Positions 25,340 to 44,305 of a stretch of 64,000 bases of DNA are shown here, piece by piece. Numbering within the stretch: position 1 is the stretch's first letter; every line of letters begins with the position of its first letter. The notes under the pieces were generated by a model. That model was not told where the DNA came from. It ran no database searches and worked only from the letters and a program-made list of their open reading frames with translations. The stretch is from Macrostomum lignano (taxonomy: Eukaryota). The stretch spans positions 1-64,000 of the forward strand of contig NIVC01000498.1 in NCBI GenBank assembly GCA_002269645.1. Reading direction: 5' to 3'. The position numbers and the translations under genes were made by a program.

Positions 25340-26549
25340 CAGCAATTGCAGTTTCGTGCGTCACCCGATCGCCATATGAGGGCATCGACCTGGCTGTGCA
25401 GAATCTGCAGAGCATGATGACGTCAATGGGCGGTCTCAGTCTGCAAGAGTACGGACTGCCTGCCGCCTCCGCTATGCCGAAAGTCGGGCCGCTGCAGTTT
25501 GACACGGTCGAGCAGGCGGAGATCACCGAGATGCGACTGCTGCTTCCGGTGGTGAAAAATGGTACCCGTGCCAACCATATCCTGGCGTGTGTGAGCAAGT
25601 CCCCGCTATGGTCTTTGTTCCGGAGGCACCGCCTTTCCAAGAACATCCGGCTGCAGAGCTTTGCAGATGCTGAGCTGTACCGTCGCTACATGCAGCTGCT
25701 CATGCAGGTAAGCTTTGTTCTTGTTCCTTCTAAAAGCAGAACACCTGTGCAGCTTGTGACTCTCGTAAATTTTCCTGCCCATCCACACAGATCGGCTCTG
25801 GGTCGGCTGATCAGTCGGACGACACCGTCTGCCTTCCTGCCGAGATTGTCATTCCGGCGGAGGCGTCGCTGTCCGAGCTGATCCAGTTTGTGTACCCTTC
25901 GTTCGAGGCGTCAGCGGAGCGCGACGGCTACTTTGCCAGCCGAGCAATCCTGGCGCCCTACAACGATGCGGTTGACGCGATCAACAACGAGTGCCTGGCA
26001 ATGTTTCCAGGCCAACTGCACGAGTATCGCTCAGTGGACAGCGTGGCTGACGAGGAAGCAGCAACGCATTTTCCTCCGGAGCTGCTGAATCAGCTGGATG
26101 CTCCAAACTTTCCTACTCACCTGCTCAAGCTCAAGGTGGGCATGCCGCTGGTTCTGCTGCGGAATCTGAATCCACCATGGCTGTGCAACGGCACCCGGCT
26201 GACTATCCTGGAGCTGGGCGTGAACGTGCTGCGCTGCAAAGTCGCTGCCGGCCAGTTCACTGGAGATGAGATCCTGCTGCCGAGGATTCCGCTGGAGCCC
26301 AACAATGCTGACCTGCCAGTCTGCTTCAAGCGGCTGCAGTTCCCAGTCAAGCCGAGCTTCTGCCTGACGATTCACAAGTCGCAGGGCCAGTCACTCGACA
26401 CCGTGGGCATCGACCTGGCTGTCGGCTGCTTTGCTCACGGCCAGCTGTACACGGCGCTTTCCCGGGCCAAGAACGTCGACAGCGTGCGCGTCCGAATCTT
26501 CGGTGAGAGAACGAAGAATGTCGTGTACCCTGAGGTGCTGACTGACTGA
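25340..26549 (+). pseudogene. Helitron PIF1-like helicase, C-terminal part, internally deleted, with one intron
   Basis: SLQEYGLP; LLPVVKNGTRA...SPLW...LSKNIRL; phase-0 GT-AG intron 25708-25790 restores the frame; RAILAPYN, LRNLNPPWLCNGTRL, RLQFPV, TIHKSQGQSL, HGQLYTALSR. The Walker A/B region is missing. Confidence 0.9.
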
Positions 26550-27275
26550 ATCTGGGAATGCCAAAGCCGTCACAAGTACAGCCAACTGATATGTAAATGG
26601 TGTTTAACACCAAGGGCCCACGGAAAGCATATCAGTTTAAATCCTGTTACAGTGGCACCATTATCATTCAAAATTTGGAAAGCACCATAGTTTTAGAAAT
26701 TTTAGACTGATAATTAGCAGCCAATAGCTGAAGCAGATATAAAAAAGCTAGATAAAATAATAATGAGCTCTATAGTTAAATTCAGGCACAAACAGCAGCT
26801 TATCCTTAAAGCTAATACGAGCTGAGCACATTGTTGCTACACTTGCAAGTAGTGGCTTGATTAAAAAAATCTTTTTTACTTCAAATAATCAAATTTGTGC
26901 TTAGCGAACAAACTAAACTATAAACTGAAGCAATTCAGCTGTAAGAAAAGAATATTAACTACGAAGTTCTTTATTCTAGTTCCATTAAAGTGCACTCACA
27001 AATAAAAGTGCGAATTATAGTATACTTTAAATTTGAGCTCATGATTTCAAAGTTCAAAGTTTGAAAGATTAAAAGTTTAGACGTCTAGAAGCATTTCGTC
27101 GTCATCATCCTGAGCCGGCTGGACAGGCTGCCGCTGCTGCGGAGCCGGCTGCTGCTGCTGCTGCTGCGGAGCCGACTGGTACTGGTTCTGCTGCTGCTGC
27201 TGCTGCTGCGGAGCCGACTGGTACTGGTTCTGCTGCTGCTGCTGCTGCTGCGGAGCCGACTGGTACTGGTTCTGC

Positions 27276-30200
27276 TTCTTTTTCTTTTCTTTTTCTTTTT
27301 CTTCAGGGCTCCTCCGTATCCGGCTCTGCCGATCTAGAGGGGGGCAGGCGCCCCATGCTGCGAAGTAGGCCGATGATGGCCTCCGGGGACTCCATCAAGT
27401 CCTCGGAGGCGAGCCCGTGGACTGCCCGGTAGCGGTCGCCACAGGGGCAGTCGTGTAGGATGTGGCGCACCGTGTCCTCCGCGCCGCAATCGGGACAGGC
27501 AGCGGAGTCCGCGATGCCAAGCCTGTGGCGGGTGCTGAAGTTAATCATACTGGCGCCAGCGCGGAGCTGGTTTATCAGCACGTGGAGGCGGCGTGGGAGG
27601 TGGGCCGGTGGTGGTTTGGCCGGTGCCGCGTAGTCGGCGTCCATGGCCCGGCGGCGGCGGCGGAGGGCTGTCCTAGCCGCTTGTAGCTGGAGCGGCACGT
27701 GTTGTTGGTCGAGGGCGGCCGCTTCCGATGCCGCTTTGTCGGCCTCCTCGTTGCCCCCCAGACCGCAGTGGGCTGGGACCCAACGGAAGGTGACCGTGCG
27801 GTTACCGGTCGTGAGAGGGAGAAGAAGGTCCCAACAGTCCGACGCCACGCTGTCAGTTTGGGCCAGAGGGCCGGCACTCAGGGCCTGGACCGCGCTCAGG
27901 CTGTCGGTAGCGATGGTGACAGACGGGGGGGCATCGTTGGAGAGAAGGAGCCTAAGGGCCTCGCGGATGGCGACCAGCTCCGCCGTAAAGCTGCTGCACC
28001 AGGCTCCGGCGGGTACGCAGTGGCGGGTACGCAGTGGCGGGTGCCAGGAACCTCCCATTGAGCGATGGCCGCTCCCCCGCCGTTCCGCGAGCCTTCGCCG
28101 ACGGACCCGTCGGTCCAAATGACGCACGGGCTGGCGGCCAGATCGGCGACGGCGGGGCTGACGCGCTCCAGCTTCTCGAGCGCCGTCATCTGGCGGGAGA
28201 CCAGGGCGGTGAGAGAGGTGTCGAACTCAACCGTCTCCGCCCCTTCGGCATCCCAGGGTGGCGGGCCAAGGTGGCGAGCCGCGCGTGGGAGACGGTCGAG
28301 CTCGCAGCCGCTGCAGAGCTCCTCGGCGGATCTACGCCAGCAGCCCCTGTGGGGGCGGTTGGCATCCAAGGCCGCTCCGGGTTGGCGGCTACGCTCTTCG
28401 CCGACGTCGCCTGCCCCGTCGACCCGGTGCGCGTCAGGCGCCGTTCTGGCCTGAGCTGCGTAAGTACGGTTCTTTAGGCGAGGTCGCGTGGTCTTGGTGG
28501 CGATGGTGTGGGCGGGAGTGTCCGCCTGTAGCCGCGCCATACGCTCGCGCAGCATGCTGGCGCGCTCCAACGCGACATGACTGACCGGGGGGAGCTCTGC
28601 GATACTGAGAAGTCGGTCGGTGTGGGTGGTTTGGACGCACCCTGTGATGAGCCGCGCACAGGCGTTTTGTTGTCGTTCAATCATGAGTCGGGTGCTCGGG
28701 CTGCTCCCGCCAGCCAGATTCCGCTGCCGTAGTCGGCCACTGAGCGCACGGTGGCGGTGTAGACCGCTCGAAGGGTGTCTTGAGTTGCGCCCAGTTGGCG
28801 GTGAGCAATGGCCTGAAGGGGTCGTCTGCGGGCGGCCATGCGGCGGCGAATGTCTTTGGCGTGTTCGGCAAAGCCGAGATGGTCGTCGAGTTTCACCCCA
28901 AGGAAGACTGGGTGGGGCTCAAAGGCCAGTTGTTTGTTGCCGATGCTGACATTGAGCCGAGCCTTGCCTCTATTTTCCGCTGGGCTGAGGCTGAAAATGC
29001 TGTAGCTGCATTTGCCTGGGCTCAGCAGCACTTTCCAGCGCTCGCACCAACGTTGGACCGCGTCGAGAGCCGGTTGAAGTTTGCTCGCGCAGTTGGCTAG
29101 CTTGCGGTCCAGGGCCAGCAGGGCGCTGTCATCGGCGTAGAGGCTGGTCTCGACCTCCGGGGCGGCTTCCGCGATGGCCTTTGGCAGGTCGTTCACGTAA
29201 ACCAGCCAGAGGAGCGGGGCGATGACGCTCCCTTGGGGCAGTCCCTCGCGAAACACTCGCTCCTTACTGGTGGCGCTGCCGAAGCGGACCTTTGCGCGTC
29301 TGTCATTGATGAAACTGTTAATCCATCTGAGAAAGCAGACGGGGACGCCGAGTTCGCGCAGCTTACAGATGAGGGCCTTGCGCCAGACCCTGTCGTAGGC
29401 CCTCGAGAAGTCAAGCAGGCAGAGCACTGCTCGTTGAGCCTGCGGGTCCTCTAGTCCGTCGAAGATTGCCTGGGCGATGCGAGCGATCTGCTCTTCGCAC
29501 GATCGGCCCTGGCGGAATCCAGCCTGCACCGAGCTGAGCATCCCGCGGTCTTCGAGGTCGTGGCGCAGGCGGAGGTAAACCATTTTTTCGGCGACTTTGG
29601 CTATGCAGCTAGTCAGGGCCACTGGGCGATAGCTGCCGGGGTCATCCGCGCGTTTTCCGCGTTTGGGTATCGGGATGATGATGGCCCGGCGCCACTGATG
29701 CGTTTGTTAATGAGATTCAGGAGCCTGTTCTCGCTGCGGGCCGGGAGGCGTTTGAGCATCTCGTTTGTCACCTCGTCCGGGCCTGGGCTCTTTCTGGACT
29801 TAAGGGAGCGGATGGCGGAGCGGAGTTCGGTGATGTTGAACTCCTTGCACAGGCCTGATCTGGCGGTTGACGTGTGTGCGCTACATACTGTGCGCATGGC
29901 GGCGAAGGCGTCGCGGTTGATGCTGCGGTCGTCTTTGTGTCGTTTGATGCGGGAGACCTCCGCGTAGATAGCGCAAAATGCGTTAGCTTTGTCGCGGTCA
30001 GTTGTGAGCGCCTTCCCCGGTCTGCCGCGGGCCTCGTCGGCAGGTAGCACCAGCGCGCAGTTGCTAGGCGGAGGTGGCGGGTCTCCTCTCATCGCTCTGG
30101 TCAGCGCAAAGAGGTCGCTGTTGACGTTCAGCTCGGCGACGCGCTGGTTCCAGAAGTTGGCTTTCTCCGCTTTGATGGTCGCGTCTGCCACGCGTCTGGC

Positions 30201-32140
30201 CGTGTGGTACGCGCTGAGGTCTTCCGGTGTTTTGGAGCGCTCCGCTTGCTTTCTGGCGCTGCTGCAGTTCCTGCAGGCCTCGGTGCACGCATCCGTCCAG
30301 AAGGGTTTGCCTCGCCTCTGTCGACATCCACGCGGAATGGAGCCGGCGGCCGCCGTGAGAATCGATTGACAGAGACGCTGGTGGTCGGCGTCAATCCGCG
30401 AGCCAGAGGTGGCTGAGGACGGTTTCAGATGGTCTTCTGCGCGGTCGAGCTCGGCCTTGAAGGACGTCCAGTCGGCTTTGGCGAAGCACCATTTCGCTCT
30501 ATGTTGTTGCTTGGCGGTCGTTTTGGCCTTAGTAAGGGTGAAAACGATGGGCAGGTGGTCGCTGCCGAGGTCTTCAATAGTGCGCCAGGATGTCTTGAGG
30601 GCTGTGGCTAGGCCACTGGTGCACCAGGTGGTATCCGGGCAGCTGAGTCCGCCGGTCGCCGGGTTGGTACGGGTGTGCGTGGCGTCCCGGTTGCAGAGGT
30701 GTAGGCTTTTGCGAAGCGCCCATTCCTCGATGCTGGCGCCCCGATCGTCGTCGGGCTGGTGGTGGTCCCAGCTCCCGTGTCCATTAAAATCACCCGCTAC
30801 GATGGATTTGTTGGCAGTTGGGATGTCGTCCCATTTTGGTTGCCAAAGCTCTTGGCGTTGGTTGCTATCTGGGGGGGCGTAGACCGACACGAGCTTGATG
30901 GCACCGGCCCCCGGGATAGCGATAGTGCAAGCGGTGAGGTCGAGCTGAGCGTGGTCGTTGCTCCATGGTTCGTTGAAGGCGATGTCCTTGCGGACCAGGA
31001 TCATAACGCCTCCGCGGCCGGTAGCGCACTGGATTTTTTTGTGGATTTTTTTTGGGTTATGGCTGCTGTCCGGCCGGGCGTCGACAACGGTCGGTCTTGG
31101 CGCCGGGGTGTCTGCAGGGCGGTTGGTCGTGCGCTCCTGCTCCTGCGTCTGTTGTTGGTTGGACCTGGCGGATTCTTGGCAACATGGGCCGTGGAAGTCG
31201 GCTCTGTAGGCTTTCGTGCTGGGGAGTTGGCTGCATTTGAGGTGCAGCCACTCCTTGCAGCCTTGGCACTGGACACTATATCCCCGGCCGGTCGGGCGGG
31301 AGCAAACAGGGCATTGCCAGGTAGAGGAGGAGCGAGCGCTAGCACTGGCGCCTTGGATTGCTTTAGTTGCTGCCGGTTTCGACTGTTCGGGGCTTGCCGA
31401 GGGGTCCGGGGTGCGGTCCGGTGGAGCGGAACGAGGCTCAGGCCATGGGCGGTTCCGTTCGCTACAGGCAGTTCGTCCGCTGCGGCAACCGGGGCACCAT
31501 CTTGCCTTCTCCTCCGGCCATCTGAGGCGGCATCTCGGGCGAGGTGGGAGGCGCCCGCCGTCTGCCGAGAGCGGGTTGTTGTTCGTAGCGGCAGCCCCAT
31601 GGGCCGTGGTGGTCGCGGCGATGGTCGGTTGGTCGAGGAGGACCTCAGAATCGGCTTTCGGCAGTCCGTCCTTGCGCGCTGCCACACTGTACCCGTGCGG
31701 CGGTTGGAAGGTGGCGCCAGGGCGGAGTTTAGTCTCTTGGAGAAGGACCGCGCAGGGGCGCAGCTGGGCTAATCTCTCGGCTAGCTCCGTGCGACGGGCC
31801 TGCAATCCATTACAGTTGAATTGAAGGACCTGGAGCTCTGGGCCGGGTTTGGAGCTGCGCCTGTGCTGTCTCCTACTCCGCCTGGGGTGGGGGTTGGGCG
31901 CGTCGTGGACCGCGTCTCCTCCCCTCAGCCGCAGGACCGTATTGATATTTCCGTCCATTTCTGCCTCATCGTGTCTGGCAGTGGGGACGTGGGCTGGGCC
32001 AAGATGTTGATAGTTGCAGCATCCCTGATGGTTGCGACACTTAGTCACCCGCGTGCAGCGGGCGTCCAGGGGCCCCTCGTGGAGGAGGTCGCTTGCCACA
32101 GGAAGGTGATGGCCTTCCTGCACCATGATCGTCTGGTCCC
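27276..32140 (-). mobile_element. LINE D: Ingi/I-group-like non-LTR retrotransposon (leader-VLRLRGG-APE[PHD insert]-RT-RNase H)
   Basis: APE (LQFNCNG, LLQETKL, GDFNGH, SDHLP), RT (GLPQGS, YADD), RNase H (WVPAHCGLGGNEEAD), C-terminal CPDC...H...C; (GAAAAA)n tail; 11-bp TSD actggttctgc at 27265-27275 and 32141-32151; several frameshifts. Confidence 0.92.
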
Positions 32141-32388
32141 ACTGGTTCTGCTGCTGCTGCTGCTGCTGCGGAGCCGACTGGTACTGGTTCTGCTGCTGCT
32201 GCTGCTGCGGAGCCGACTGGTACTGGTTCTGCTGCTGCTGCTGCTGCTGCGGAGCCGACTGGTACTGGTTCTGCTGCTGCTGCTGCTGCTGCGGAGCCGA
32301 CTGGTACTGGTTCTGCTGCTGCTGCTGCTGCTGCGGAGCCGACTGGTACTGGTTCTGCTGCTGCGGAGCCGACTGGTACTGGTTCTGC

Positions 32389-35300
32389 TTCTTCTTCTTC
32401 TTCTTCTACGCAGCCCCCGCGTCGCCGCTGTCCGGCGGCTGGGGGGGAGGGCGACCTGCAGGCCGCCCCATCATCCTCAGATACCGGCAGATTCCGCCCG
32501 CGTCGTTGAGGTCGAGAGGGTGAGCAAGGCGGGCGAGTCTCCGCGTGGACACTGCTGCAGGAGGTGCTCTTCTGTGTCTTCGTCTCCGCAGTCCGGACAG
32601 AGCGGAGTCTCGGTAAGGCCGATACGGTAGCGGGTGGCCGCGCAGGCTGTGCTGCAGCCGGCCCTCAATTGGCAAACCGCCACCGTCTCGCCACGAGTCA
32701 GGCCGCCGTAGCGCTTCCAGGGCGAGCTACGGTTCAAGAGCTTGAGATCGAGGTGTCGCCTGGCTCGTTTGATGGCAGCCCTGGCGGCTTCGAAGGCGAT
32801 GGGCTGGTCCTGCGTCAGGTCCGAAGCCCGGTTCGCCGCCTTGTCGGCTCTTTCGTTGCCATCGACGCCGACGTGGGCCGGCACCCAGGTAATGCGGACC
32901 GGGCGAGCTTCTTGACTGAGCAGGCTCCACACCAGCTGTCCCATGGGCTCGCGTTGGTCAGCTGGCCCGCGCTGCAGGGTGAGGATGCCCGCCATGCTGT
33001 CCGTGAGAATGTCGATGCTGCCCCCGTGTGGTTGCTGGAGCTGTAGGCAGCGGCGGATGCCTAGAGCTATAGCCGCTAGCTCCGCCGTCGTGCTGCTGCA
33101 GACGGAGCCAGCGGCTGTCGTGTGTACTTCGCCCACAGGAGGGTGTGCAGGACGGCCGCGCCACGGCCGTCCCGGCAGCCGTCCGTGGCGCTGCCGTCAG
33201 TCCAGATGACGATATCGTGTTGAGGTCTGGATTCCAGGGCGTTGATGGCTCTCTCCCGTCTGATGCTGTCCGGCACTTTGCGGCCGCAGGTGACCTGCAG
33301 GCTGGTGTCGAAGCTGACTTCGCTGGGTGACTGCCATGGCGGCTCGGGCATCGGGAAGGGGGCGCGCCTCCCCGCTGGCTCGAGGGCGTTGATGCCGAGC
33401 TCCAGTGCGGCGCGCCTCCAGCAACCACGGAAAGGCCTGCGGTAGTCGCTCTCCAGCAGGACCCGGTCATCCACCGGGTGTTGCTCCGTAGCCACGCCTC
33501 GTGAGCACGGGATTTCAGGCGGGGCGGCAGGGTCTAGCGGCAGTCTGGTGCACCGGGACCTCCCGGGCAGCCTCAGAGCCCGTTCCCGCAAGGTCGCCGC
33601 TCTCTCCAGGATCAGGTGTCCGATGGGCGGCAGGTCTGCGGCCGCGAGGAGCGCCCTGACGTTCGTGGGCTTAATGCACCCCGAGATGATCCTGGCGCAG
33701 CAGAACTGTTGCCGTTCGATGAGAAGCCTGCTGCTCGGCGCCGCAAAGGCACCCCAGATTCCGCACGCGTAGTCGGCAATAGCACGCACGGTGGCGACGT
33801 AGGCAGTGCGGAGGACGTGGAAGGAGGCGCCGCCGCTACGAGTCGCCAGGGCGGCGAGGGGCCGTCGGCGGACTGCCATGCGGCGGCGGATATCCGCCAC
33901 ATGATGTTGGAACGTTAGCTGGCCATCAAGTTTGACGCCGAGGAAAGTCGGGTGGAGCTCAAACTGCAGAGGCTCGCCGCAGATGCTGAGGTGCGGGCGA
34001 ACTTTCCCATTGGTCTCGTTGGGTGCCAACGAAAAGGTCGTGAAACAGCACTTGTTGGGGCTAAGTTCGACCTTCCACCGGCGGCACCATTCAGCGGCTG
34101 CGTCAAGGGCCGGTTGAAGATTGATTGCGCAGCGCTGAAGAGTGGTGGCTGAGCAGAGGATGGCCGAGTCATCTGCGTAGAGGCTGACTGCTGATTGAGG
34201 GGCTGCCCGCGAGATGGCTTCCGGTAGGTCGTTAATGTAGCAGTTCCAAAGCGTAGGTGCGAGGACGCTGCCCTGTGGCAGTCCTTCCCTGAAGCAGCGC
34301 TCGCGGCTGGTGGCAGCGTTCCACTTCACCGCTGCCCTGCGTTGGCAGAGGAAACCGCGGACCCATCTGATGATGCGGCGGTTGATCCCCATGCGGAGCA
34401 TCTTGGCATAAAGCGCTGCTCTCCAAACCCTGTCGTAGGCGCGACAGAAGTCTAACAGGGCAAGAATGCTGCGGATGGGAGGCTGCGATTCGAGGCCGTC
34501 GAAAATATCCTGACATATCCTGGCTATCTGCTCGTCGCAGCCGCGGTGTCGGCGGAAGCCAGCCTGGCAGGGCGTCAGGAGGTTCTTGGTTTCTAGCGTC
34601 CAGTTGAGTCTGGCTAGCACCATACGTTCGGCGCACTTGGCGACGCAGCTCGTAAGCGCGACCGGTCGATAGCTGCTCGGGAGTTTTGGGACCTTCCCCT
34701 TTTTTGGCACTGGGATGATGACCGCTCGGCGCCAGCTGTTCGGCGTGGAGCCGTCTTTCCAGCTGCGGTTGATGAGGTGCAGCAGGCGTTCGTCGATCTC
34801 CGCTGGTAGGTGCTTAAGCATTTCGTTGCTGACGCCATCCGGGCCGGCCGCCTTACCGGACTTCAATTTACGGAGCGCGGTGCGGAGTTCGCCCAGCGTG
34901 AAGTCGGCCGCGGTCGGGTCTTGGGCCTCCTCTTCGGACTGCCGGAGGCCGCTGTTGGCTTCGTAGCGGATGGCTGCGTCATTCGCCCGTCGTTCAACCC
35001 TGCTAACCTCGGCATAAAGCTGGCAGAAGAGATTTGTCTTTTCTTTATCGGAGTTGCAGGTGCGCGCCGGGCGACTGCCGGAGGCCGGTCTGCTAATTGC
35101 CGCAGGGTCGCGTCCCGTGGGCGCTTCGCCGCGCATAGATCTGAGCAGCTTAAAAAGGTCAGAGTTGGCATCGAGCGCTTCCGCGCGCTGTTCGAGGTGA
35201 TCGCGGCGCTCTTTTCTAATGACCTTGGCGGCTTGGTGACGGGCTCTGTTGAAGGCTGTAATGGCCTCTTGGGTCTGAAGTTCCTCAGCTTGGGACCGGG

Positions 35301-36965
35301 CAGCTTGGGTTTCCGCGCAAGCATTTGAGCAGGCTTCGGACCAGAATGGGGCCCGACGTCCCGCCGTGCTGCCTCTCGGGATGCTCTTATGTGCTGCCTT
35401 CAGGATCATGCTGCTGAGCGCTTCGGCCTCCTGGTCAATGGTCATGGCGTTCGCCGCTGACCCAGTAGGGTTGGGCTGTTGGGCGCAATGGTTGGCCTGG
35501 AGTTCCGACTTGTAGGTTGTCCAGTTCGCTTTGCGATAGTTCCAGCGGGGGGGGCCTCGTTTATGCACTGGACGGGGCGCCGCGGCGTTGAACAGGATCG
35601 GGAGGTGGTCGCTACCGCAGTCTGGTCCAGTCCTCCAGCTGCGTGTGACCGTTTCGGCCAAGGAGCCGGAAACGCAGGTAATGTCCGGGGTTGACCGTTT
35701 GCCGGTGGCGGGGCTAGTCCTGGTATGAGCATTGCTGTTGCAGATAGCCAGCCCATTTCTGGTTGCCCATTCCTCGACGCGCTGTCCTCGCTGGTCCTCT
35801 TCCATGTGGTAATCCCAAGCGCCGTGGGCGTTGAAGTCGCCTCCGATAATAGTGCGATTATTGGTCGGGATGCGCTCCAGTGGGTTGTCCTCGGTGTTTT
35901 CGCCGGCAGATCTTTGGGCGCTGACTGGCGGTATGTATATCGAGACCACCAACAGGTCCGGTTGATGAGGCAAACTGAGCCTACACGCTGCGATGTCGCT
36001 TCCGTCGGTGGCCGGCCCCCTCTTGACCGTGCTGTAGCAGATGTTGGAGCTCACTAGTATCATCGCGCCCCCGCGGCCTGTGATTCTGTTTGCGTTCTTA
36101 GGGTGGATCTGGCTGGGCTGTGGCGCCGTGACCTCTGGCTCGTCGTCGGTCTGGGTGAGTGGTTGGCCTGGGTCGGTGCCGCGTCTGAGGCATCGGCGGC
36201 GCCCAGAGCAGCCGCTGCACCAGTTCGTCGGGTTGGCCGGCTCGCGGCGCTTGCAGGTTGGGCCTATGTGTGTCGTCGCTTGCGATGTATTCCCGGTTGC
36301 ACCATCCCGTGCCGGTTCATTGTTATCCGGCGTCGGATCCCGGTTGGTGCAAGCGGTGCGGCGGGATCGGCATCCGGGGCACCACTGTTCTCGGGTGTCC
36401 GGGAGTCGAGTGCGGCAGCGAGCAAGTTTTTTGGGCGGTCCGGCGCTGCCGTGTTGTTGTTGTTGCGTCGGTCGGGCCTCGTCCGCCGGTGCCGTTGATT
36501 GTACCGGGGCGTCCGTGTCCGGGTACGGAGTCCCGTCGCTCCTGGCGGCGACGACGTAGCCGGGTGGTGGGCGGAAGTCGTCAGAGGCCTTGAGCTTCGT
36601 CTCCTGCAGGAGAACGACAGCGGGGCGGTCGATGGTCAGCCGATGGGCCAGCTCCGTGTAGCGGCTACGAATGCCATTGCAGTTCAACTGCAAGAACGGG
36701 AGCTCTGGGCTTGGCTGATCGTCGACGGTCGACTTGCGCTTCTTGCGTCGCGCTCTGGTCGGCCTGCTGTCACTGCCTCCGCGAAGCCGTAGGACACGGT
36801 GGAGGTTGTCCTGGGGTTGCTCGGTCGAAAAGGATGAGGATGATCTGCGATGGTGTGGACCATTAGTCATTCCCGAGCTATCGCTCAGGTCCAGGGGCTC
36901 CCGGGGTCCTGGCCGATTGCTCATGTCGGCCGTTTCCCCTTCTCGGAGGATGTCCACAGGCCCCC
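32389..36965 (-). mobile_element. LINE C: Ingi/I-group-like non-LTR retrotransposon (leader-VLRLRGG-APE-RT-RNase H)
   Basis: ORF 33076-37431 holds APE and RT (GLPQGSVLAP, YADDS); RNase H in ORF 32477-33136; (GAA)n tail; TSD actggttctgc at 32378-32388 and 36966-36976. Confidence 0.93.
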
Positions 36966-37206
36966 ACTGGTTCTGCTGCTGCTGCTGCTGCTGCTGCGGA
37001 GCCGACTGGTACTGGTTCTGCTGCTGCTGCTGCTGCTGCGGAGCCGACTGGTACTGGTTCTGCTGCTGCTGCTGCTGCTGCGGAGCCGACTGGTACTGGT
37101 TCTGCTGCTGCTGCTGCTGCTGCGGAGCCGACTGGTACTGGTTCTGCTGCTGCTGCTGCTGCTGCGGAGCCGACTGGTACTGGTTCTGCTGCTGCTGCTG
37201 CTGCTG

Positions 37207-40200
37207 TTGTTGTTGTTGTTGTTGTTTGCGCTGAAGGCGCGAACATCCTAGTTTGCATCGTTCTCTTTCCACTTGGTGCGGTACCAGGCCCAGTACCGGA
37301 GCGCCACCTCTGGATGCTCGTTGAGGTGGTGCAGCTCCGTGGGCCCGTCCAGCCTTCGCCTGATCTCCGTGGCCGGGCACTGACTGCTCACATGTACGAC
37401 CGTTTCTTCTTCGGTCCCGCACGCCGGGCACATTGCGTCGGTGGTTCTGCCTATCCGCCGGCAGTAGGCCCTCAACTCCAGCGAGTGGCCCGTGCGGAAT
37501 CGAATAAAGCTAACCGCCTCCGCCCTGTTCTTGTAGGCTGGGTGCCTGGCCGTACCGAGGTGGCCATAGGTGTCTTTCGATCTTTCGTGCGACCAGTACC
37601 TGCTGTTCTGGCTGGCCGCCTTCGTCTCGGCTGCCAGTCGTCTGCGGACAACGCTCGCCAGTACTCCGGCCTCCGCCTGCGGCAGTGTCGTCGCGCCGCC
37701 GGCCACTTCGTCCGCGGCCTCGTTGCCTTCCAGACCGCAGTGGGCCGGCGTCCAGCAGAGCGCAATCACTCGTCCGGTCTGGCAGGTCCTCGATAGCAGC
37801 TGGCGGATCTTTGTCGCGATCGGATTGCGGCCTCGGCCCTGCACTGCGAGGAGCCCACTCTTGCTGTCGGAAGCTATTAGCGCAGTTCTCCACGCCGGCT
37901 GCTCGCTGAGCCATTCCACCGCTAGCTCTAGGGCGGTGAGCTCGGCTTGCAGCGAGGAGGCCGGCTGCCCGGCTGCCCTCCGGATGCTGATCTGATCTCC
38001 GACCTGCTCTCCTGTTAGACGCCCGTTCCGATAGATGACCGCACCGCTGCCGCCGCCCTCCCTCCGCACCGATCCGTCCGTGAAGATAGTGATGTCCGGG
38101 TCTGGGCTGGCCTGGTTGATCTTCGCTTGGGCCATCTCAAGGTTTCCGGCGCGCGACTCTTTCCTGGCATCGTCGGTGGATACGAAGAAGCTGATGTTAT
38201 CTCTCCAACTCTGCCACGGGGGGAGGTCCGACATGTCCTCTAGCCTAGCCACCTTGGCTAGACCGGTGTTGGCGAGACCCTTCCTGGCCTGGGCTCTCCA
38301 GCCCAGCCTCTTCAGCCTTTGCCGGGTCTGCTGGGTGCCGAGGCGGTATCTTGGCGAGCTGTGCTCGAGCCTGAGCCATCGGTCCAGTTTTGCGCTCCAT
38401 ATCACCTCGCTCTGCTCCCGGATCGACATCATCCCGCTTTCGCAGCGTAGGGCCTCAACCGGGTGGTGGCGACCGCGCCGGTAATGATGCGTTCCGCGCT
38501 GTGCTGCACCACTTCGAGCTTACGCCAGGCCGCGCAAGTGAGCCACGGCATCCAGGCGCAGGCCCCATACAGCATCTTGCTCCGGATGAGGGCAACGTAG
38601 GTGTTGCGGATCAGCTCGGCCTGCCAGCCCCAAGAGCTGCCTGCGAGGCGCCGCATTAGGTTGAGGCGGTTCCGGCAGCTGTGGATCACATTGTCAGCGT
38701 GCGCTGTGAACCTCAGCTGTCTGTCAAACGTAAGCCCGAGGAACTTGGGCTGCTCAACCCATTGCATCGTCTGCCCTTAAAGCACGACGTTCGTGGCACC
38801 GGCCCTCTGCGGGGTCATCGCCGGGTCACTGGAGAAGAGGGTGAGCGAGCATTTCCCCGTGGCAACCGGTAGCAGCCATGCTTTGCTCCAAGCCTCCAGG
38901 GTGTCAACCGCCTTCTGCTGGGTGGACAAGGCCTCCACTACTCTTCTGCTGCTGGTCCAGGTGGCTAGATCGTCCGCATAGCCGCTCACCTGCAGGTCCG
39001 GGATAGCGTCAAGTTGCCTGAGAAGGTCATCGATGAAGACGATGAAGAGCAGCGGCGAAAGCACGGATCCCTGCGGCAGCCCTTGCCGGAAAAGTTCCCG
39101 CTTGCTGTCCACGTCGCCGACCCGGACGCACGCCAGCCTGTTCGCTAGCCAGCTCTGTATCCATCTGACCGTTTTTGGGCCAATGCCAGCTTTAAGCAGC
39201 TTGATCAGCAGCCCGTCACGCCAAACCTTGTCGAACGCGCGCGCAAAGTCGAACAGCGCCAGAACCGTTAGTTTTCGCTCTTGGAAGGCGTCGTCAATCG
39301 ATTGGGACAGCCGGAGCAGTTGATCCTCCGTGGACCTGCCCCCTCTGAACCCCGCTTGCGCTTCGCTGAGACCGCCGGTGGACTCCAGAACATGCTTGAT
39401 TCGGTTCGCAAGCACCCGTTCCATCCACTTACCTAAGCTGGAGGTTAGGCTAACCGGGCGGTAGGATCCTATGTCCTTGGCGGGCTTTCCGCTCTTAAGA
39501 AGAGGTATGATGCGGGCCGTGCGCCAGTTCTGCGGCGTGAAGCCGCAGTCATACAACCGGTTAAACAGCTTCAGGACCTCTTGGAGCGCTTCACGGGGGA
39601 GCGCCTTCAGCAGCTTCGGGTGCAGTCCGTCCATTCCGGCGGCTCTGTTGGCGTCCATGCTTTGCAGCGCTGCTAGCAGCTCGTCCATGGTCATGGCTTG
39701 ACAGTCCTCGGTGGTGGGGGTAGCGGCGCTTTGTCTCAGCCGGGCGTTAATTTCTCTGCGTGCCCATCTGTGACTGGCCCTAACGGTGGTGGCGCTGACC
39801 TTGGCGTATACCTTCGCAATGATGTTGGCCTTGGCTCTGTTCGACTTGTACCTTTTGCCTTCGTACTCCAGGATCTGGTCCCCGCTTTGGGGGGGCGTCG
39901 CGCCGTTCAGTTGCTTCAGCAGCGACCACATCTTGTCCGCCGTCGCATTGCTATCCAGCTTGTCCCTCCATCGATCCCTCTTATTCTCCTGCTGTTTCTG
40001 CTTGATCTGCCGGTCCAGGTGCTTCCAGTCCTCAGACTCGATACCCTCACTCATTCTGATGTTGTCTCTCTCCGCCGTCAGGAGCTGGACTTCCTCGTCG
40101 ATGAACTCAGCGTTCCTGGTTTTCCTGGCCACCATGCCCACAGCCTTGCGGGCCGCCTTCACCAGGCACGTTCGCAGCTGTTCCTCATGCTCCGAGTTGC

Positions 40201-42620
40201 TGAGAGCCATAAGGTTCGCGCTCTTTAGGTGCTCTCTGACCAGACGCTGGTACAGCGGCCAGTCCGCCTTCTTCCAGTTCCAGCGCATGATCTTCCTGGT
40301 GCTGGGGACCGGGTCTGCGTTCTCTGCCCTGCGGCTGATGATGATCGGCAGGTGGTCGGAGCTTAACCTGTTAGCTGTCCGCCATTCCCACTGGTCTAGC
40401 TCCGCTTGCGGGACTATGGTCACGTCCGGCGAAGACCTGTGTTCACCGTCCCAGCTGGTTCGGGTGGTGGATCCATCGTTCAGCGCCGTTAACATCTGCT
40501 CGTCCATCCAGTCGGCGAGCTCCTCGCCTCGCCTGTCTCTGGGGAGTTGTTGTCCCACAGCTCATGGTGTGCGTTCCAGTCGCCGGCCAAGAGCAGGTTC
40601 TCGCCGCCTGGGATTTGCGCCAGCTCGGCTGCTGCCATGTAGCACGTGGCTTGGGGCGGGATGTAGATGTTGATCAGCAGCAGTTGTTCTAGACCTTGCC
40701 CGCTGTTTGCTTCAAAGTATAGCCTGACGCCTAGCATTTCTAGCGGCGAGTTGGTCACTGGCGCCTGTATCCTTTCGAACCGCAGCCCGTGTCTGATGAT
40801 GGTCACCAGGCCTCCCCCTCTCGCGCTGTGGTGTTGCCTGTGCCGGTTGCGGTCCGCACGTAGCACCGTGTAGCCTGGCCAGGCTAGCAGCTCGTCCTCG
40901 GCCTTCAGCTTGCTCTCTTGCAGCATAATGACATCGGCATCTTGCTGCCTCACGAGCTCTTTGAGTTCCGGCTCCTTGGCCTTGAAGTGGTCACAGTTCC
41001 ATTGTATGATGGTGATCTTGCTGGTCTTCGGCTCTCCGCTGCACCCTGCCGGCCTCTGTTGTCCGTCCGCTATCTGTGCCTGACCAGCGGCGGGTGGTGG
41101 GGGTGGGAGCGCTGTGCCTTTTGGCATGGCTGCGGCCTCGTGGGCGCATTCGTTGCATGTCCAGCCCCGGTGTTTCAGACTTTCGATTTGCCTCCGGGTG
41201 TAGGTCCTGTGGCAGCAGGACCAGTGAACCTTCTTGCCGCAGTTCTTGCACTCAGCCCCTTGTCCTCTTCTCCTGAATCTCTTGCATTCCGCACACCGGC
41301 CTGCCCTCTCAGCGGCGAGCGGTCTCTCCGAACTGTTCCGGGCTAGGCTGGGCCGTTGGGGTGGTTCTGTCTCCCCGGTGTTATCGGCTGTTCTGCTTCT
41401 GTTGTTGGCGGCGCAGGGCTGGCATATCCAGCTAGCTCCTTCGTCAGGTCTCCAGCGCGAGATGGTCGTGCAGGCGCGATGGAAGACACGGTGACATTGT
41501 GCGCACGGGGTGCCGCTGTGGCCGGCCCTGATCTTGCGATCGCACTTGCCGCAATAGCTCTGCTCTGCCTCTGCGGGGCCACCTGGTCGAGCGTCGGGGT
41601 TCCGCCGGATTTTTTAGTTTTAGGATTGGGTGGCGGATTCTCCCGGCTGTCCTCGACTTCGGTGAGTCTCCTCCCCACCGGCGAGTTGATGGTACTGGTT
41701 TGCTCCTCTCCGAGCCTCTCCAGGCCGCTCCTATTCGCTGTCACGTCCTCGTCAGCCCTCGGTATTTCGATGCTAACTTCCGCAGCTCCTGCTGTCCGGC
41801 CTTCCATCCCGTCCAAGGCGGCCGTGGCCATCTTCACCGCTTGGCGCAACCTCGCAGACATCGCCCCGCTGCACCCCGTACTCCTGTTGAAGGGTCTGAT
41901 GTTGTCCTTCTTGATCCATGACGCCTGCCCAGAGCCAAACCAGCTGACCGGCACGTCATTGCTGCCATGCGCAATGCGGCTGAGTGCCGCTGCCGCGTCA
42001 CACGCTTGCAGGCGCTCGGCCGGCCACCAGGCCCAGCCCCTGAGCTTGGCCCAAATGATGTTGTTCCCGCTTCTCGGGTCTTCCTCTTGCTTGTCCTGAG
42101 TCACGGTAAGCTTGCTCTTCGCGTCACTCGCCGTGCCACGCCCGCCTGGTTGCTTGCCCCACTTGGGCTTGTCCTCTCCTGGCATCCTGCCGGGCGTGCT
42201 GGCGGTTGGCCGGCTTCCTTGGCAGCATGGGCCTGTCCAGTCTCCAGCCTTCTCCGTCGCGTAGAATCTACCTCTGGGCAGGCCGCTGCACTTGAGATGG
42301 AGGTGGTTTCCGCAGTCCTTGCAGCGTGGGCCCCGGCCCGTGGCTCGTTTGCAGCAGAGCCCACATAGGGTGCTCCGAGCCATGGGTGGCCCCGGGTTGC
42401 TCTCAACGTCGCCTGCTCTGAGCAGCAGGGGCCTGCTGTCAACCTTGTAGGGCCTGAAGCCGCTGCCTTTTCCCCTGTCCGTGCCCATACTCCGGTGATG
42501 CGACCTGCTCCTCCGATGCTGGGTGTTCATATCTTGGATGTTCGGCTTCAGTATGCTTCCTTTCGTGCCTAGCCGTCCTCGACTAGGTTCCACAGCACAC
42601 CGCTTGGCGGTATGGAAGCT
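37207..42620 (-). mobile_element. LINE B: Ingi-like non-LTR retrotransposon (2A-PHD-PWWP-PHD-APE-RT-RNase H)
   Basis: GDVESNPGP; PHD-like Cys/His fingers; WAKLRGWAWWPA; APE (IQWNCD, LQESKL, GDWNAHH); RT (GLPQGSVLSP, YADD); RNase H (FTDGS, WTPAHCGLEGNEAAD); (AAC)n tail; inserted in a CAG run; four frameshifts. Confidence 0.93.
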
Positions 42621-42627
42621 GTGCTGC
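42555..42627 (-). ncRNA. Putative HDV-like self-cleaving ribozyme at the 5' end of LINE B
   Basis: Manual fold: P1 GCAGCAC/GUGCUGU (G.U first pair), P2 GCUUCC/GGAAGC, P3 ACC/GGU with loop GCCAAGC, GG after P1, P4 CCUAGUCG/CGGCUAGG, J4/2 CGAA. Confidence 0.6.
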
Positions 42628-43146
42628 TGCTGCTGCTGCTGCTGCTGCTGCGGAGCCGACTGGTACTGGTTCTGCTGCTGCTGCTGCTGCTGCTGCGGAG
42701 CCGACTGGTACTGGTTCTGCTGCTGCTGCTGCTGCTGCGGAGCCGACTGGTACTGGTTCTGCTGCTGCTGCTGCTGCTGCGGAGCCGACTGGTACTGGTT
42801 CTGCTGCTGCTGCTGCTGCTGCGGAGCCGACTGGTACTGGTTCTGCTGCTGCTGCTGCTGCTGCGGAGCCGACTGGTACTGGTTCTGCTGCTGCTGCTGC
42901 TGCTGCGGAGCCGACTGGTACTGGTTCTGCTGCTGCTGCTGCTGCTGCGGAGCCGACTGGTACTGGTTCTGCTGCTGCTGCTGCTGCTGCGGAGCCGACT
43001 GGTACTGGTTCTGCTGCTGCTGCTGCTGCTGCGGAGCCGACTGGTACTGGTTTTGCTGCTGCTGCTGCTGCTGCGGAACCGGCTGGTTCTGATTCTGCTG
43101 CTGCTGCTACCGCTGATGATGCTTGATGCTGCTGCTGCTGCTGCTG

Positions 43147-44305
43147 TTGTTGTTGTTGTTGTTAGTTGGCCCAAACGCGCCCAGGATCCATGCAGAACCT
43201 GGCCAGCGCGACCAAACCATCAGGGTAATCGGACAAGTTGCTGAGGGAGAGCGGAGCTCCAATGAAGCGACGGCGGGCGGCCTCGAGAGCAGGGCACGCT
43301 GTCCAGTGCTCAAGGGTGTCTGGTTCGAGAAAGCACCTTTGGCACGTCGGATCCACCGTGGGGTCCATGAGGGCGCGGAAGGCTCCGAAGAGGCTGGAGT
43401 GGCCGGAGCGCAGCCGGGCAAGAAGGACAGCGTCTTTGCGGTTAGTAATAAGCCGACGTTCCTTTTCGGCGTCGGCGGAGGCATAGGTGAGACGAGATCT
43501 CGCGTGGGTGACCGGCTTGTCAACCAGAGTGCGGCGGATCACCGAGGCGGCAGTGGGAAAACTGATGCTGGGGCGCGGTGCTTCATCGGCGTTGGCGGCA
43601 GCGGAGTTAGCAGCGCGGTCCGCGAGTTCATTGCCCGGAATGCCGACATGACCCGGGACCCACAGGAGAGCGCGGCAGTTGTGCGGGAAGCGGAGGGAAG
43701 AGGCCAGGCGGCTGAAGGGACGCTGAAGGGCGCGCAGAAGAGACTGACTGTCAGAGCAGATGATGGCAGGGCGCGTGGGGTGCGAGCGGAGGTAGTCGAG
43801 GGCTAGGACCAGAGCGCGGAGTTCCTCTTCAAAGGAGCTGGTGTAGCGGCTGCCAGCGGACGTGCGGGCTTCCACGGTCGTCGGGACTGCCGGGTCTCCG
43901 ATGGTGACCACAGCGGCCGCCCCGCCAGCCTCGGAGCCGCCGGCCGCCGAACCATCGCAGTAAATGACGAGCTCAGCCGGGTGAGACCGGATGACGTCGA
44001 GAGCGGCAAGACAGCGCTCCAACGGGGCGTGGTGGCCGGAGGCAAAGGATTGTCAGCTAGGATCGCCGGAAGATGTTGGTCCAGCCAGGGGCATGGGAAG
44101 GCCGGTGTGAGCGGCAGACGCGGCGTGAGATCAATGCCAAGGCCATTGGCAAGCTGAGCCGAGCGGAGTCTCCAGCTACTGCGGGCGAGCCGGTGTTGCA
44201 CGGTGCCCGAGAGGGCGATGGCGCGAGGATGGTCGTTGGGCAGCCTGAGCGCGCGTTCCCTGGCGATGAGGCAAAGGCGGTCGCTGGTGTTCCTGTAGCT
44301 GCCGA
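43147..44305 (-). mobile_element. LINE A: 5'-truncated RNase H-bearing LINE
   Basis: YCDGS...ELRAL...SDSQS...WVPGHVGIPGNELAD, then CQRC...EHWTAC; (AAC)n tail; flanked by a ~76-bp direct duplication of host sequence. Confidence 0.9.

What the first reader, a model, noticed from the sequence alone, without database searches (positions are those of the whole stretch)
31917..36795. Ubiquitin C-terminus match VLRLRGG in the leaders of LINEs C and D
C has HRVLRLRGG-SD (36795-36775) and D has NTVLRLRGG-DA (31937-31917), each shortly before the APE domain. Flanking residues differ and so do most codons (GTC CTA CGG CTT CGC GGA GGC vs GTC CTG CGG CTG AGG GGA GGA), so conservation is at the peptide level. 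Known: VLRLRGG is the exact ubiquitin C-terminus, cut by deubiquitinases after GG. It occupies the same position as the 2A peptide in LINE B. Inferred: a host-DUB cleavage site, without a ubiquitin fold, that frees the retrotransposon protein from its leader. A literature check is needed.
Basis: partly seen in the sequence, partly recalled or inferred. Interest (0 to 1): 0.9.

Follow-up and report, generated by a model that had tools for sequence, protein, structure and literature searches.

The report
Ubiquitin-tail motif replacing 2A in LINEs
Two retrotransposon copies carry, just ahead of their endonuclease, a conserved copy of ubiquitin's last 7-11 residues with no ubiquitin fold, at the spot where their closest relatives carry a 2A "self-separating" peptide, so it is probably a site for cutting off the leader, which has not been tested.

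Summary
VLRLRGG lies at 36775-36795(-) in LINE C and 31917-31937(-) in LINE D, 27-30 residues before the APE endonuclease. About 0.0015 chance hits are expected in the window.

In C the match to ubiquitin extends to NLHRVLRLRGG, 9 of 11 residues. Two further diverged relatives carry the motif at the homologous position: a MetaClust protein and Macrostomum lignano PAA56246/PAA91395. The block is 64-100% identical between lineages, against 16-38% for the leader upstream of it. C and the M. lignano copy differ at 7 of 11 codons, all synonymously.

No ubiquitin fold was found by Pfam, hhalign, a PDB profile search or AlphaFold2. No protease domain was found in the element.

The four carriers form one clade inside a group rich in 2A peptides. 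Its sister, P0195, has GDVERNPG|P, then an Arg-rich linker, then the APE, which is the same layout.

The best reading is a short ubiquitin-tail motif that took over the leader-release role of 2A and is probably cut after GG by a host deubiquitinase-type protease. Cleavage is untested, and such enzymes hydrolyse tail-only substrates poorly. I found no prior report. It is a new variant of a known kind, of moderate to high interest.

The parts
36775..36807 (-). LINE C ubiquitin-tail block NLHRVLRLRGG. The core VLRLRGG is at 36775-36795, and the putative scissile bond lies after GG, before Ser.
   Evidence: The block matches ubiquitin residues 66-76 at 9 of 11 positions.
36808..36966 (-). LINE C leader, from the 5' junction (CAGAACCAGT|GGGGGCC) to the block. 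It is acidic and low in complexity, and its first ATG is at 36924.
   Evidence: AlphaFold2 gives pLDDT 42-55 with no secondary structure.
36694..36774 (-). LINE C Arg/Lys-rich linker (SDSRPTRARRKKRK...) between the motif and the APE. It looks like a nuclear localisation signal.
35596..36693 (-). LINE C APE endonuclease, from LQLNCNG to SDHLPI. It is split by a Cys-rich insert (WCPGCRS at 36364-36384).
   Evidence: Pfam PF03372/PF14529.
34003..34710 (-). LINE C reverse transcriptase domain.
   Evidence: Pfam RVT_1, E=1.1e-33.
32388..33136 (-). LINE C RNase H and C-terminal zinc knuckle, in a separate ORF after a frame break, followed by the 3' UTR and an (AAG)n tail ending at 32388.
   Evidence: Pfam RNase_H.
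31917..31949 (-). LINE D ubiquitin-tail block NINTVLRLRGG. The core VLRLRGG is at 31917-31937, and the putative scissile bond lies before Asp.
31950..32140 (-). LINE D leader, from the 5' junction (CAGAACCAGT|GGGACC) to the block. Its first ATG is at 32126.
31827..31916 (-). LINE D Arg-rich linker (…PRRSRRQHRR…).
30546..31826 (-). LINE D APE endonuclease with a Cys-rich insert that includes a PHD finger (31179-31316).
   Evidence: Pfam PF03372, PF14529 and PF00628.
27275..29622 (-). LINE D RT (28999-29619), RNase H (27717-27986) and an A/G-rich 3' tail ending at 27275. The region is broken into several ORFs.
42387..42428 (-).
36976..37206 (-). Block of the 42-bp repeat (CAG)7 AACCAGTACCAGTCGGCTCCG immediately 5' of C, open in frame with C's ORF. 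Equivalent blocks lie at 32141-32364 (5' of D), 42630-43115 (5' of B) and 27148-27276 (3' of D).

Best explanation
C and D are single-ORF, APE-type non-LTR retrotransposons. Their layout is leader, APE with a Cys-rich insert, RT, RNase H and a zinc knuckle. The N-terminal leader ends in a short linear motif, (N-L-H-R)-V-(L/M)-R-L-R-G-G, that copies the C-terminal strand and tail of ubiquitin without the ubiquitin fold.

The motif arose once in a flatworm (Macrostomum-type) lineage. It sits at the position where sister lineages carry a 2A/StopGo peptide, directly before an Arg-rich linker and the endonuclease. I infer that it does the same job as 2A, which is to detach whatever was translated upstream from the APE-RT protein so that the enzyme gets a defined N-terminus (Ser, Asp or Asn, followed by the basic NLS-like stretch). 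The upstream material could be a variable leader or host-encoded sequence where the element sits in frame in a coding repeat.

The most likely agent is a host cysteine protease of the deubiquitinase or Ubl-protease type that cuts after Gly-Gly.

Shown here: the motif, its selection, the absence of a fold, the absence of an element-encoded protease domain, the positional swap with 2A, and in-frame insertion into host coding sequence. Inferred: that cleavage happens, which enzyme does it, and that the motif came from a captured ubiquitin 3' end.
For: 1. The motif is present and not a chance match.
2. Four lineages with 59-80% identity in the APE N-terminal segment keep V(L/M)RLRGG: C, D, P0001, and P0048/P0198 from M. 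lignano. The block is 64-100% identical between them, against 16-38% for the upstream leader and 20-40% for the linker.
3. C and the M. lignano copy are identical at 11 of 11 residues while 7 of 11 codons differ synonymously, with no non-synonymous change.
4. The similarity reaches past the four to six tail residues a protease cleft would be expected to need, to LH.V of ubiquitin strand beta-5. Ubiquitin is the only kind of PDB protein the leader profile hits, and only over its last ~22 residues. This suggests descent from a ubiquitin coding sequence.
5. The position equivalent to the buried ubiquitin residue L69 is R, T, S or R, while V70, R72, L73, R74, G75 and G76 are invariant. That fits a fold-less, cleft-binding peptide.
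6. In an APE-domain NJ tree the four carriers are monophyletic and nested among 2A-bearing elements. The 2A-bearing member of the sister pair, P0195, reads MRAGDVERNPG|P-DQVRAEPRATRRGRGRHGRRHRQR...LLQLNCNG, with the same Cys-rich APE insert. P0188 and P0189 are similar. No sequence has both devices: about 29 relatives have 2A and 4 have the ubiquitin tail.
7. The residue after GG is S, D, N or D and never Pro. By my own knowledge, Pro is the one residue that blocks cleavage of ubiquitin fusions.
8. There is a rationale for a release device. The M. lignano copy is inserted in frame in the coding sequence of a C2H2 zinc-finger gene, and the uninterrupted paralogue P0197 shows the empty site. C, D and B are each open in frame with the upstream 42-bp repeat. 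Met positions in the leaders are not conserved.
9. 2A in the N-terminal region of single-ORF LINEs is an established device (PMC3708506 and PMC3894237).
10. Short LRGG peptides can be turned over by deubiquitinases in lysates and cells (PMC7460613 and PMC7477763).
Against: No cleavage data exist. Deubiquitinases rely on the ubiquitin body as an exosite, and LRGG tetrapeptides are 'very poorly hydrolyzed' (PMC7477763). No fold was detected here, so processing might be inefficient or need an unknown adaptor.

Only four lineages are known, all probably from one flatworm group. C and D themselves are broken copies with frame breaks downstream. The AlphaFold2 negative rests on a four-sequence alignment. 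The NJ tree has no support values.

In the window the host gene's reading frame through the repeat is unresolved. The Q frame used by the LINEs has a TAG at the start of the array, and a plausible splice gives the Ser/Arg frame. The repeat is open in all three sense frames, so being in frame with it is weak evidence there.

Cleavage would leave N-terminal Asp or Asn in three of four lineages. These are destabilising residues under the Arg/N-degron rule (my own knowledge), which is either a feature or an argument against cleavage.
Confidence: 0.45

Rival explanations
1. The conserved block is a docking or pseudo-substrate motif that is not cleaved. It could bind a deubiquitinase or another protein that recognises the ubiquitin tail, for example to keep the retrotransposon protein deubiquitinated and stable.
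For: Selection on the peptide is shown, but cleavage is not. Tail-only substrates are poor deubiquitinase substrates, which fits binding better than turnover. Conservation extends to V70 and H68 equivalents, which in ubiquitin are contact residues (structural point from my own knowledge).
Against: This does not explain why the motif sits exactly where sister lineages have a 2A separation device followed by the same Arg-rich linker. Known readers of the free ubiquitin tail, such as ZnF-UBP domains, need a free Gly-Gly carboxylate (my own knowledge).
Confidence: 0.15
2. The block is simply part of a basic N-terminal extension of the APE that acts in nuclear localisation or nucleic-acid binding (RGG-like), and its identity with the ubiquitin tail is coincidental or convergent.
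For: It is immediately followed by an Arg/Lys-rich stretch in all four lineages. It contains R.RGG. AlphaFold2 shows the whole region as disordered.
Against: The invariant residues include hydrophobic V, L/M and L, which is not typical of an NLS or an RGG box, and there is only one RGG. The match to ubiquitin is 7 of 7 and extends to 9 of 11 residues, with about 0.0015 chance hits expected. The basic linker itself is poorly conserved in sequence (20-40%), while the block is conserved at 64-100%. Sister lineages have the same basic linker without the block.
Confidence: 0.2
3. The leader is a highly degenerate but still folded ubiquitin-like domain, so this is an ordinary ubiquitin-fusion precursor.
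For: Leader lengths from the first Met to GG are 50-70 residues, close to ubiquitin's 76. In P0001 the spacing from a conserved Gly (TNG) to the C-terminal Gly is 29 residues, equal to the G47-G76 spacing in ubiquitin (my reading).
Against: No Pfam ubiquitin-family hit appears even at E<=10. hhalign and the PDB profile search align only the last ~11-22 residues. AlphaFold2 predicts no strand or helix before the APE. The leaders are low in complexity, only 16-38% identical, and differ in length by indels. The core position L69 is polar or charged in all four.
Confidence: 0.05
4. The LXGG site is cut by a papain-like or adenain-like protease supplied in trans by another mobile element or virus, or is a neutral relic of a captured ubiquitin 3' end with no present function.
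For: LXGG is the recognition motif of viral papain-like proteases, which double as deubiquitinases (PMC8348309 is listed; PMC4822132 covers adenovirus protease). The window and genome are full of other mobile elements.
Against: No protease domain was found in C, D or their neighbours. A relic without function is contradicted by synonymous-only divergence across lineages. Dependence on an unrelated element is an unstable strategy.
Confidence: 0.07

Closest known systems
2A / StopGo peptides in the N-terminal region of single-ORF APE-type non-LTR retrotransposons (L1Tc, Ingi, CR1, Rex1, L2, Crack; Heras 2006; Odon et al. 2013, PMC3708506; PMC3894237)
   Same: The position is the same: 40-80 residues from the N-terminus and directly or closely upstream of the APE. 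The element type is the same (single ORF, no ORF1). The presumed outcome is the same, namely separating a leader from the APE-RT protein. The nearest relatives of C and D use 2A with the same downstream Arg-rich linker.
   Different: There is no D(V/I)ExNPGP motif. 2A acts co-translationally inside the ribosome with no protease, whereas a ubiquitin tail would need a post-translational or co-translational protease. 2A leaves Pro at the new N-terminus, and here it would be Ser, Asp or Asn.
Natural ubiquitin-fusion precursors (polyubiquitin, Ub-eL40, Ub-eS31, FUBI-eS30), the ubiquitin-fusion technique, and ubiquitin insertions in cytopathic pestivirus polyproteins that are processed by host enzymes (last item from my own knowledge)
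   Same: The P7-P1 sequence VLRLRGG is identical. The P1' residue is not Pro. Host deubiquitinases release the downstream protein.
   Different: All of those carry the complete 76-residue beta-grasp fold, which deubiquitinases use as an exosite. C and D retain only the last 7-11 residues.
LXGG cleavage sites of viral papain-like protease/deubiquitinases (coronavirus PLpro, tymovirus and marafivirus PRO, adenovirus protease)
   Same: A fold-less LXGG motif inside a polyprotein serves as the processing site. These proteases show that a ubiquitin-tail peptide alone can be a good substrate for a suitably adapted enzyme.
   Different: Those proteases are encoded by the same genome. No protease domain was detected in C or D, so a host enzyme would be required.
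Synthetic LRGG peptide reporters of deubiquitinase activity (Z-LRGG-AMC, Ac-LRGG-ACC, beta-hairpin-LRGG cell reporters; PMC7477763, PMC7460613)
   Same: These are tail-only substrates that some deubiquitinases (for example UCH-L3) and viral papain-like proteases do turn over.
   Different: They are artificial and have small leaving groups. Rates are far lower than with whole ubiquitin. In the LINE the leaving group is a protein of more than 1,200 residues.

Membership tests
Ubiquitin / ubiquitin-like domain fusion | A beta-grasp fold of about 76 residues upstream of the Gly-Gly | tested here: not met
   There are no Pfam hits in four leaders at E<=10. hhalign aligns only 20 columns. The PDB profile search hits ubiquitin only over residues ~54-76. 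AlphaFold2 gives a disordered leader with pLDDT 42-55, on a shallow alignment. tblastn with ubiquitin finds nothing else in any frame.
Ubiquitin / ubiquitin-like domain fusion | A C-terminal LRLRGG tail followed by a non-Pro residue | tested here: met
   V(L/M)RLRGG is followed by S, D, N or D in the four lineages.
Ubiquitin / ubiquitin-like domain fusion | Release of the downstream protein by deubiquitinases | not testable with these tools
   This needs a cleavage assay.
2A / StopGo recoding peptide | A C-terminal D(V/I)ExNPG|P motif | tested here: not met
   The motif is absent from the C, D, P0001 and P0048 leaders. C has only a broken DMSNRPGP. LINE B and about 29 relatives have the motif.
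2A / StopGo recoding peptide | [quoted passage not shown] | tested here: met
   The ubiquitin-tail block lies 27-30 residues before the APE start, as does the 2A in P0195, P0188, P0057 and P0081.
Viral-type LXGG polyprotein site | A papain-like or adenain-like protease encoded by the same element | tested here: not met
   Pfam finds only APE, PHD, RT and RNase H in C and D.
APE-type non-LTR retrotransposon (single ORF, RNase H-bearing) | APE, RT and RNase H domains in that order, a 3' simple-repeat tail, and target-site duplication | tested here: met
   The tails are (AAG)n or A/G-rich, and CAGAACCAGT appears on both flanks of C and D.
   No reference Repbase sequences were available. Only an APE NJ tree of database relatives was made.

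The most novel reading that the evidence does not exclude
A flatworm LINE lineage replaced its ribosomal 2A 'skip' with a fold-less mimic of the ubiquitin C-terminus and uses the host's deubiquitinating enzymes as its processing protease. This would let the element be translated as a fusion from whatever lies upstream, including host coding sequence into which it has inserted in frame, and still release an APE-RT protein with a defined N-terminus. In three of four lineages that N-terminus would be Asp or Asn, which are N-degron residues that could set the protein's half-life. It would be the first tail-only, host-deubiquitinase-dependent processing site in a mobile element, and a natural minimal deubiquitinase cleavage tag.
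Probability: 0.4. Interest if true: 0.85.

Novelty: new variant of a known kind. Interest (0 to 1): 0.65.

Why it matters
It would add a second, mechanistically unrelated solution to a problem that single-ORF LINEs are known to solve with 2A. That would strengthen the view that releasing the leader is itself the selected function, which is still debated for 2A.

It would show that a ubiquitin tail without the ubiquitin body can be a biologically used cleavage site for host enzymes. That is relevant to deubiquitinase specificity and offers a compact, genetically encoded cleavage tag.

It also links to how LINEs that land in frame inside host coding repeats can be expressed. The claim is directly testable with a simple reporter and GG mutants.

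Tried and rejected
- A full ubiquitin gene or remnant near the motif in any frame: tblastn found only the two tails.
- A degenerate ubiquitin-like fold: rejected by Pfam at E<=10, hhalign, the PDB profile search and AlphaFold2 (weak because the alignment has only four sequences).
- An element-encoded protease: none found by Pfam.
- More family members: three word-indexed protein searches, one exhaustive profile search of 1.84 billion representatives and one metagenome DNA scan yielded only P0001 and the M. lignano cluster. All other relatives have 2A or nothing.
- A contig for P0001: not on record.
- An HDV-like ribozyme at the precisely defined 5' ends (GGGACC / GGGGGCC), which would bear on how the leader is translated: there were no Rfam hits at E<=1, and the first 135 nt of C, D, L001 and B fold unremarkably (z -1.1 to -1.9). 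This is not excluded, because such ribozymes are hard to detect.
- The 3' junction of the M. lignano copy: the element is truncated in the RT and the host gene does not resume within the locus.
- The host reading frame of the 42-bp repeat gene in the window: unresolved.
- Literature: no paper holds RLRGG together with 'transposable'. The five papers with LRGG and 'retrotranspos' are, judged by title and abstract, irrelevant. The 2A-in-LINE papers never mention ubiquitin. Other queries were empty or irrelevant.
Full report
**Observation.** On the minus strand, LINE C (ORF 33076..37431) reads ...TEQPQDNLHRVLRLRGG|SDSRPTRARRKKRK..., with VLRLRGG at 36775-36795. LINE D (ORF 29613..32126) reads ...EAEMDGNINTVLRLRGG|DAVHDAPNPHPRRSRRQHRR..., with VLRLRGG at 31917-31937. 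The quoted codons are right: four of the seven differ, all synonymously. From six-frame composition, about 0.0015 occurrences of VLRLRGG are expected in the 64-kb window. A motif scan and a tblastn with ubiquitin find only these two. In C the match to ubiquitin runs further: NLHRVLRLRGG against TLHLVLRLRGG, 9 of 11.

**Anatomy.** C and D are APE-type non-LTR retrotransposons with one long ORF. The order is a leader of 50-70 residues counted from the first Met, the ubiquitin-tail block, an Arg/Lys-rich linker of 27-30 residues, the APE endonuclease (PF03372/PF14529), RT (PF00078), RNase H (PF00075) and a C-terminal Cys/His knuckle. The APE is interrupted by a Cys-rich insert, which in D contains a PHD finger (PF00628). 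Both copies have frame breaks downstream, C before RNase H and D in several places. No protease domain is detectable.

**Surroundings.** The region 27.1-44.4 kb is GC-rich. On the minus strand it holds four LINEs head to tail. A is 5'-truncated (3' part 43147-~44290). B (37207-42623) belongs to another family and has a canonical 2A, LLLRAGDVESNPGP, at 42387-42428, followed by a PWWP domain. C spans 32388-36966 and D spans 27275-32140. They are separated by blocks of one 42-bp repeat, (CAG)7 AAC CAG TAC CAG TCG GCT CCG.

**Is it conserved?** Database searches found two more carriers.
- P0001 (MetaClust UPI0007A11279) has ...SENLLSVMRLRGG|NSDISVHRRRPRRRHRR...VQFNCNG.
- The M. lignano cluster P0048/P0198 (PAA56246.1, PAA91395.1; locus L001) has ...DDNANLHRVLRLRGG|DSNVTASPRQTRSSKKRGRG...LQFNCNG.

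The four lineages are well diverged, with 59-80% identity in the first 54 APE residues. Even so, the 11-residue block is 64-100% identical, the leader before it only 16-38%, and the linker after it 20-40%. In the multiple alignments V, R, L, R, G, G are among the few invariant leader columns. C and the M. lignano copy encode the identical 11 residues with 7 of 11 codons different, all synonymous. This is purifying selection on the peptide.

**Is a ubiquitin fold hidden in the leader?** I found no evidence of one.
- Four leaders give no Pfam hit even at E<=10.
- Profile-profile comparison with ubiquitin aligns only the last 20 columns.
- A profile search of all PDB sequences hits nothing but ubiquitin, only over residues ~54-76, and weakly for a single unit (E about 0.65).
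- AlphaFold2 on the four-sequence alignment predicts no secondary structure before the first APE strand, with pLDDT 42-55. This negative is weak because the alignment is shallow.
- The position equivalent to ubiquitin's buried L69 is R, T, S or R, while V70, R72, L73, R74, G75 and G76 are invariant. By my own knowledge of ubiquitin-deubiquitinase complexes, those are the residues that lie on the surface or in a deubiquitinase cleft. That pattern suits an extended peptide, not a folded domain.

**Relation to 2A.** I checked 68 database relatives with a recognisable APE start and 7 metagenome loci. About 29 carry a 2A (D/G-[VI]-E-x-NPGP) upstream of the APE, four carry the ubiquitin tail, and none has both. 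In an NJ tree of the APE domain (214 columns, no support values) the four carriers form one clade, ((P0001,C),(P0198,D)), nested among 2A-bearing elements. The 2A-bearing member of the sister pair, P0195, begins MRAGDVERNPG|P-DQVRAEPRATRRGRGRHGRRHRQRDQATPAPPADLELLQLNCNG and has the same WCxxC insert in its APE. P0188 and P0189 are alike. The layout [release device]-[Arg-rich linker]-[APE] is therefore preserved and only the device differs. Published work places 2A in exactly this N-terminal region of single-ORF LINEs and shows that it is active. It does not mention ubiquitin (PMC3708506 and PMC3894237).

**Why a release device might be needed.**
- The elements have sharply defined 5' ends, CAGAACCAGT|GGGGGCC in C and CAGAACCAGT|GGGACC in D. 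They end in an (AAG)n or A/G-rich tail followed again by CAGAACCAGT. Two different elements therefore sit at the same position of the 42-bp unit with a 10-bp duplication.
- In each of B, C and D the upstream repeat is open in the frame of the LINE ORF, reading QQQQQQQNQYQSAP. This is weak evidence, because the repeat has no stops in any sense frame.
- The array looks like the repetitive coding part of a host gene. Upstream there is a TATA-like box, an ATG and a GT..AG intron (44447-44750). After D there is a ...DDDDEMLLDV-stop followed by AATAAA. The host frame is unresolved.
- The M. lignano locus gives stronger evidence. There the LINE starts (TGG GAC...) directly after ...QQQQQQQSLM of a C2H2 zinc-finger gene and is in frame with it. 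The paralogue P0197 shows the uninterrupted gene continuing ...SLM|QQRSPHECPQCGRGY..., a bona fide C2H2 finger.
- The positions of Met codons in the leaders are not conserved among the four lineages.

Together these points suggest that translation can start at variable places, possibly in host sequence, and that a downstream release site standardises the N-terminus of the enzyme. This is inference.

**Mechanism and its weak point.** The only established biochemical meaning of ...LRLRGG|X inside a polypeptide is hydrolysis after Gly76 by deubiquitinases or Ubl proteases. The residue after GG is never Pro here. However, deubiquitinases gain most of their efficiency from contacts with the ubiquitin body, and LRGG tetrapeptides are 'very poorly hydrolyzed' (PMC7477763). 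Short LRGG reporters are nonetheless turned over in lysates and cells (PMC7460613). Viral papain-like proteases also show that a fold-less LXGG can be a good site for a suitable enzyme (and the title of PMC8348309). I therefore rate three claims separately:
- A selected ubiquitin-tail motif that replaced 2A at the same position: about 0.85.
- That it serves to release the leader: about 0.55.
- That it is cut after GG by a host deubiquitinase-type protease: about 0.4-0.45.

**Rivals.**
- A non-cleaved docking or pseudo-substrate site (0.15).
- A basic NLS or RGG-like extension that resembles ubiquitin only by coincidence (0.2). This is disfavoured by the invariant hydrophobic residues, the 9-of-11 match, and the poor conservation of the basic linker itself.
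- A cryptic folded ubiquitin-like domain (0.05).
- A protease supplied in trans, or a neutral relic (0.07). The relic version is contradicted by the synonymous-only divergence.

**Origin.** The extension of identity into strand beta-5 (L67, H68, V70) goes beyond what a protease cleft would be expected to need (my own knowledge). This suggests descent from a real ubiquitin 3' end, for example an ancestor sitting in frame just after a ubiquitin unit whose 5' flank was carried along. That is speculation. It could be tested by comparing nucleotide sequences with the species' ubiquitin genes and by finding basal members with a whole ubiquitin unit.

**Novelty.** In the searchable library no paper combines RLRGG with transposable elements, and none describes ubiquitin-tail motifs in LINE leaders. 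I know of no such report, though Repbase notes and subscription journals were not searchable. I class it as a new variant of a known kind: a leader-release device of single-ORF LINEs that draws on ubiquitin-fusion processing. The source organism is inferred to be a flatworm close to Macrostomum, from the best hits only.

Noticed in passing
window 26975-44750 (minus strand); repeat blocks at 27148-27276, 32141-32364, 36976-37206 and 42630-43115: The LINE nest sits inside what looks like a host gene whose body is a 42-bp (14-codon) repeat. A TATA-like box, an ATG (~44614) and a GT..AG intron (44447-44549) lie upstream. After LINE D there is ...DDDDEMLLDV-stop (~27078) and AATAAA (~26975). Four LINEs from at least two families are inserted in it, all in the gene's orientation. 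C and D are at the identical position of the repeat unit, with CAGAACCAGT on both flanks, which suggests site-specific insertion. The host reading frame is unresolved.
   Followed up: partly
window 44300-44385 and 43100-43175: The 5'-truncated LINE A is flanked by a direct duplication of at least 58 bp, probably about 75 bp, of the start of the repeat array (…GCAGCAGCAGCATCAAGCATCATCAGCGGTAGCAGCAGCAGCAGAATCAGAACCAGCC…). That is unusually long for a LINE target-site duplication.
   Followed up: partly
L001 1840-2000, and proteins P0048, P0198 and P0197: In M. lignano (NIVC01002647.1) the D-like LINE is inserted in frame in the coding sequence of a polyQ-rich C2H2 zinc-finger gene and is annotated as one fusion protein. 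Paralogue PAA93933.1 (P0197) preserves the empty site, ...QQQQQQSLM|QQRSPHECPQCG.... The LINE copy is truncated in its RT.
   Followed up: yes
window 36082-36440 (C) and 31023-31650 (D; PHD finger at 31179-31316): The APE endonuclease of this clade is split by an insert of 110-230 residues carrying a conserved C-x8-10-WCxGC-x5-C motif. In D and P0198 it also carries a PHD finger. In other LINEs the PHD lies N-terminal to the APE. Relatives P0039, P0047, P0063 and P0195 share the Cys motif.
   Followed up: partly
window 36904-36927 (minus strand): The C leader contains ...ILREGETADMSNRPGP..., which loosely resembles a 2A (LLxxAGDVExNPGP) with an insertion. It may be a decayed 2A upstream of the ubiquitin tail. 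It is not seen in D, P0001 or P0048, and chance cannot be excluded.
   Followed up: no
window 37207-42623 (minus strand): LINE B belongs to a different family. Its order is 2A, a Cys-rich PHD-like segment, a PWWP domain (PF00855, E=1.6e-11), then APE, RT and RNase H in separate ORFs, with a (CAA)n tail. It is inserted in the (CAG)n part of the repeat unit and is also open in frame with the repeat.
   Followed up: partly
window 62705-64000 (+): An ORF of 431 residues that runs off the window end matches the Mononegavirales RNA-dependent RNA polymerase (PF00946, E=3.4e-47, profile positions 616-1015 of 1068). It lies in a locally GC-rich patch and is probably an endogenous viral element fragment.
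   Followed up: no
window 25890-26549 (+): An ORF fragment carries a Pif1 2B domain and a UvrD-like helicase C-terminal domain. It is probably a remnant of a Helitron-type or Pif1-like helicase gene.
   Followed up: no
leaders of C (36808-36966) and D (31950-32140), L001 1921-2130, and P0001: The in-frame Met codons of the leaders are not at homologous positions in the four lineages, and the distance from the element's 5' end to the first ATG is very short (about 14 nt in D). A small (E/D)xPLD motif and an acidic patch just before the ubiquitin-tail block are shared.
   Followed up: partly
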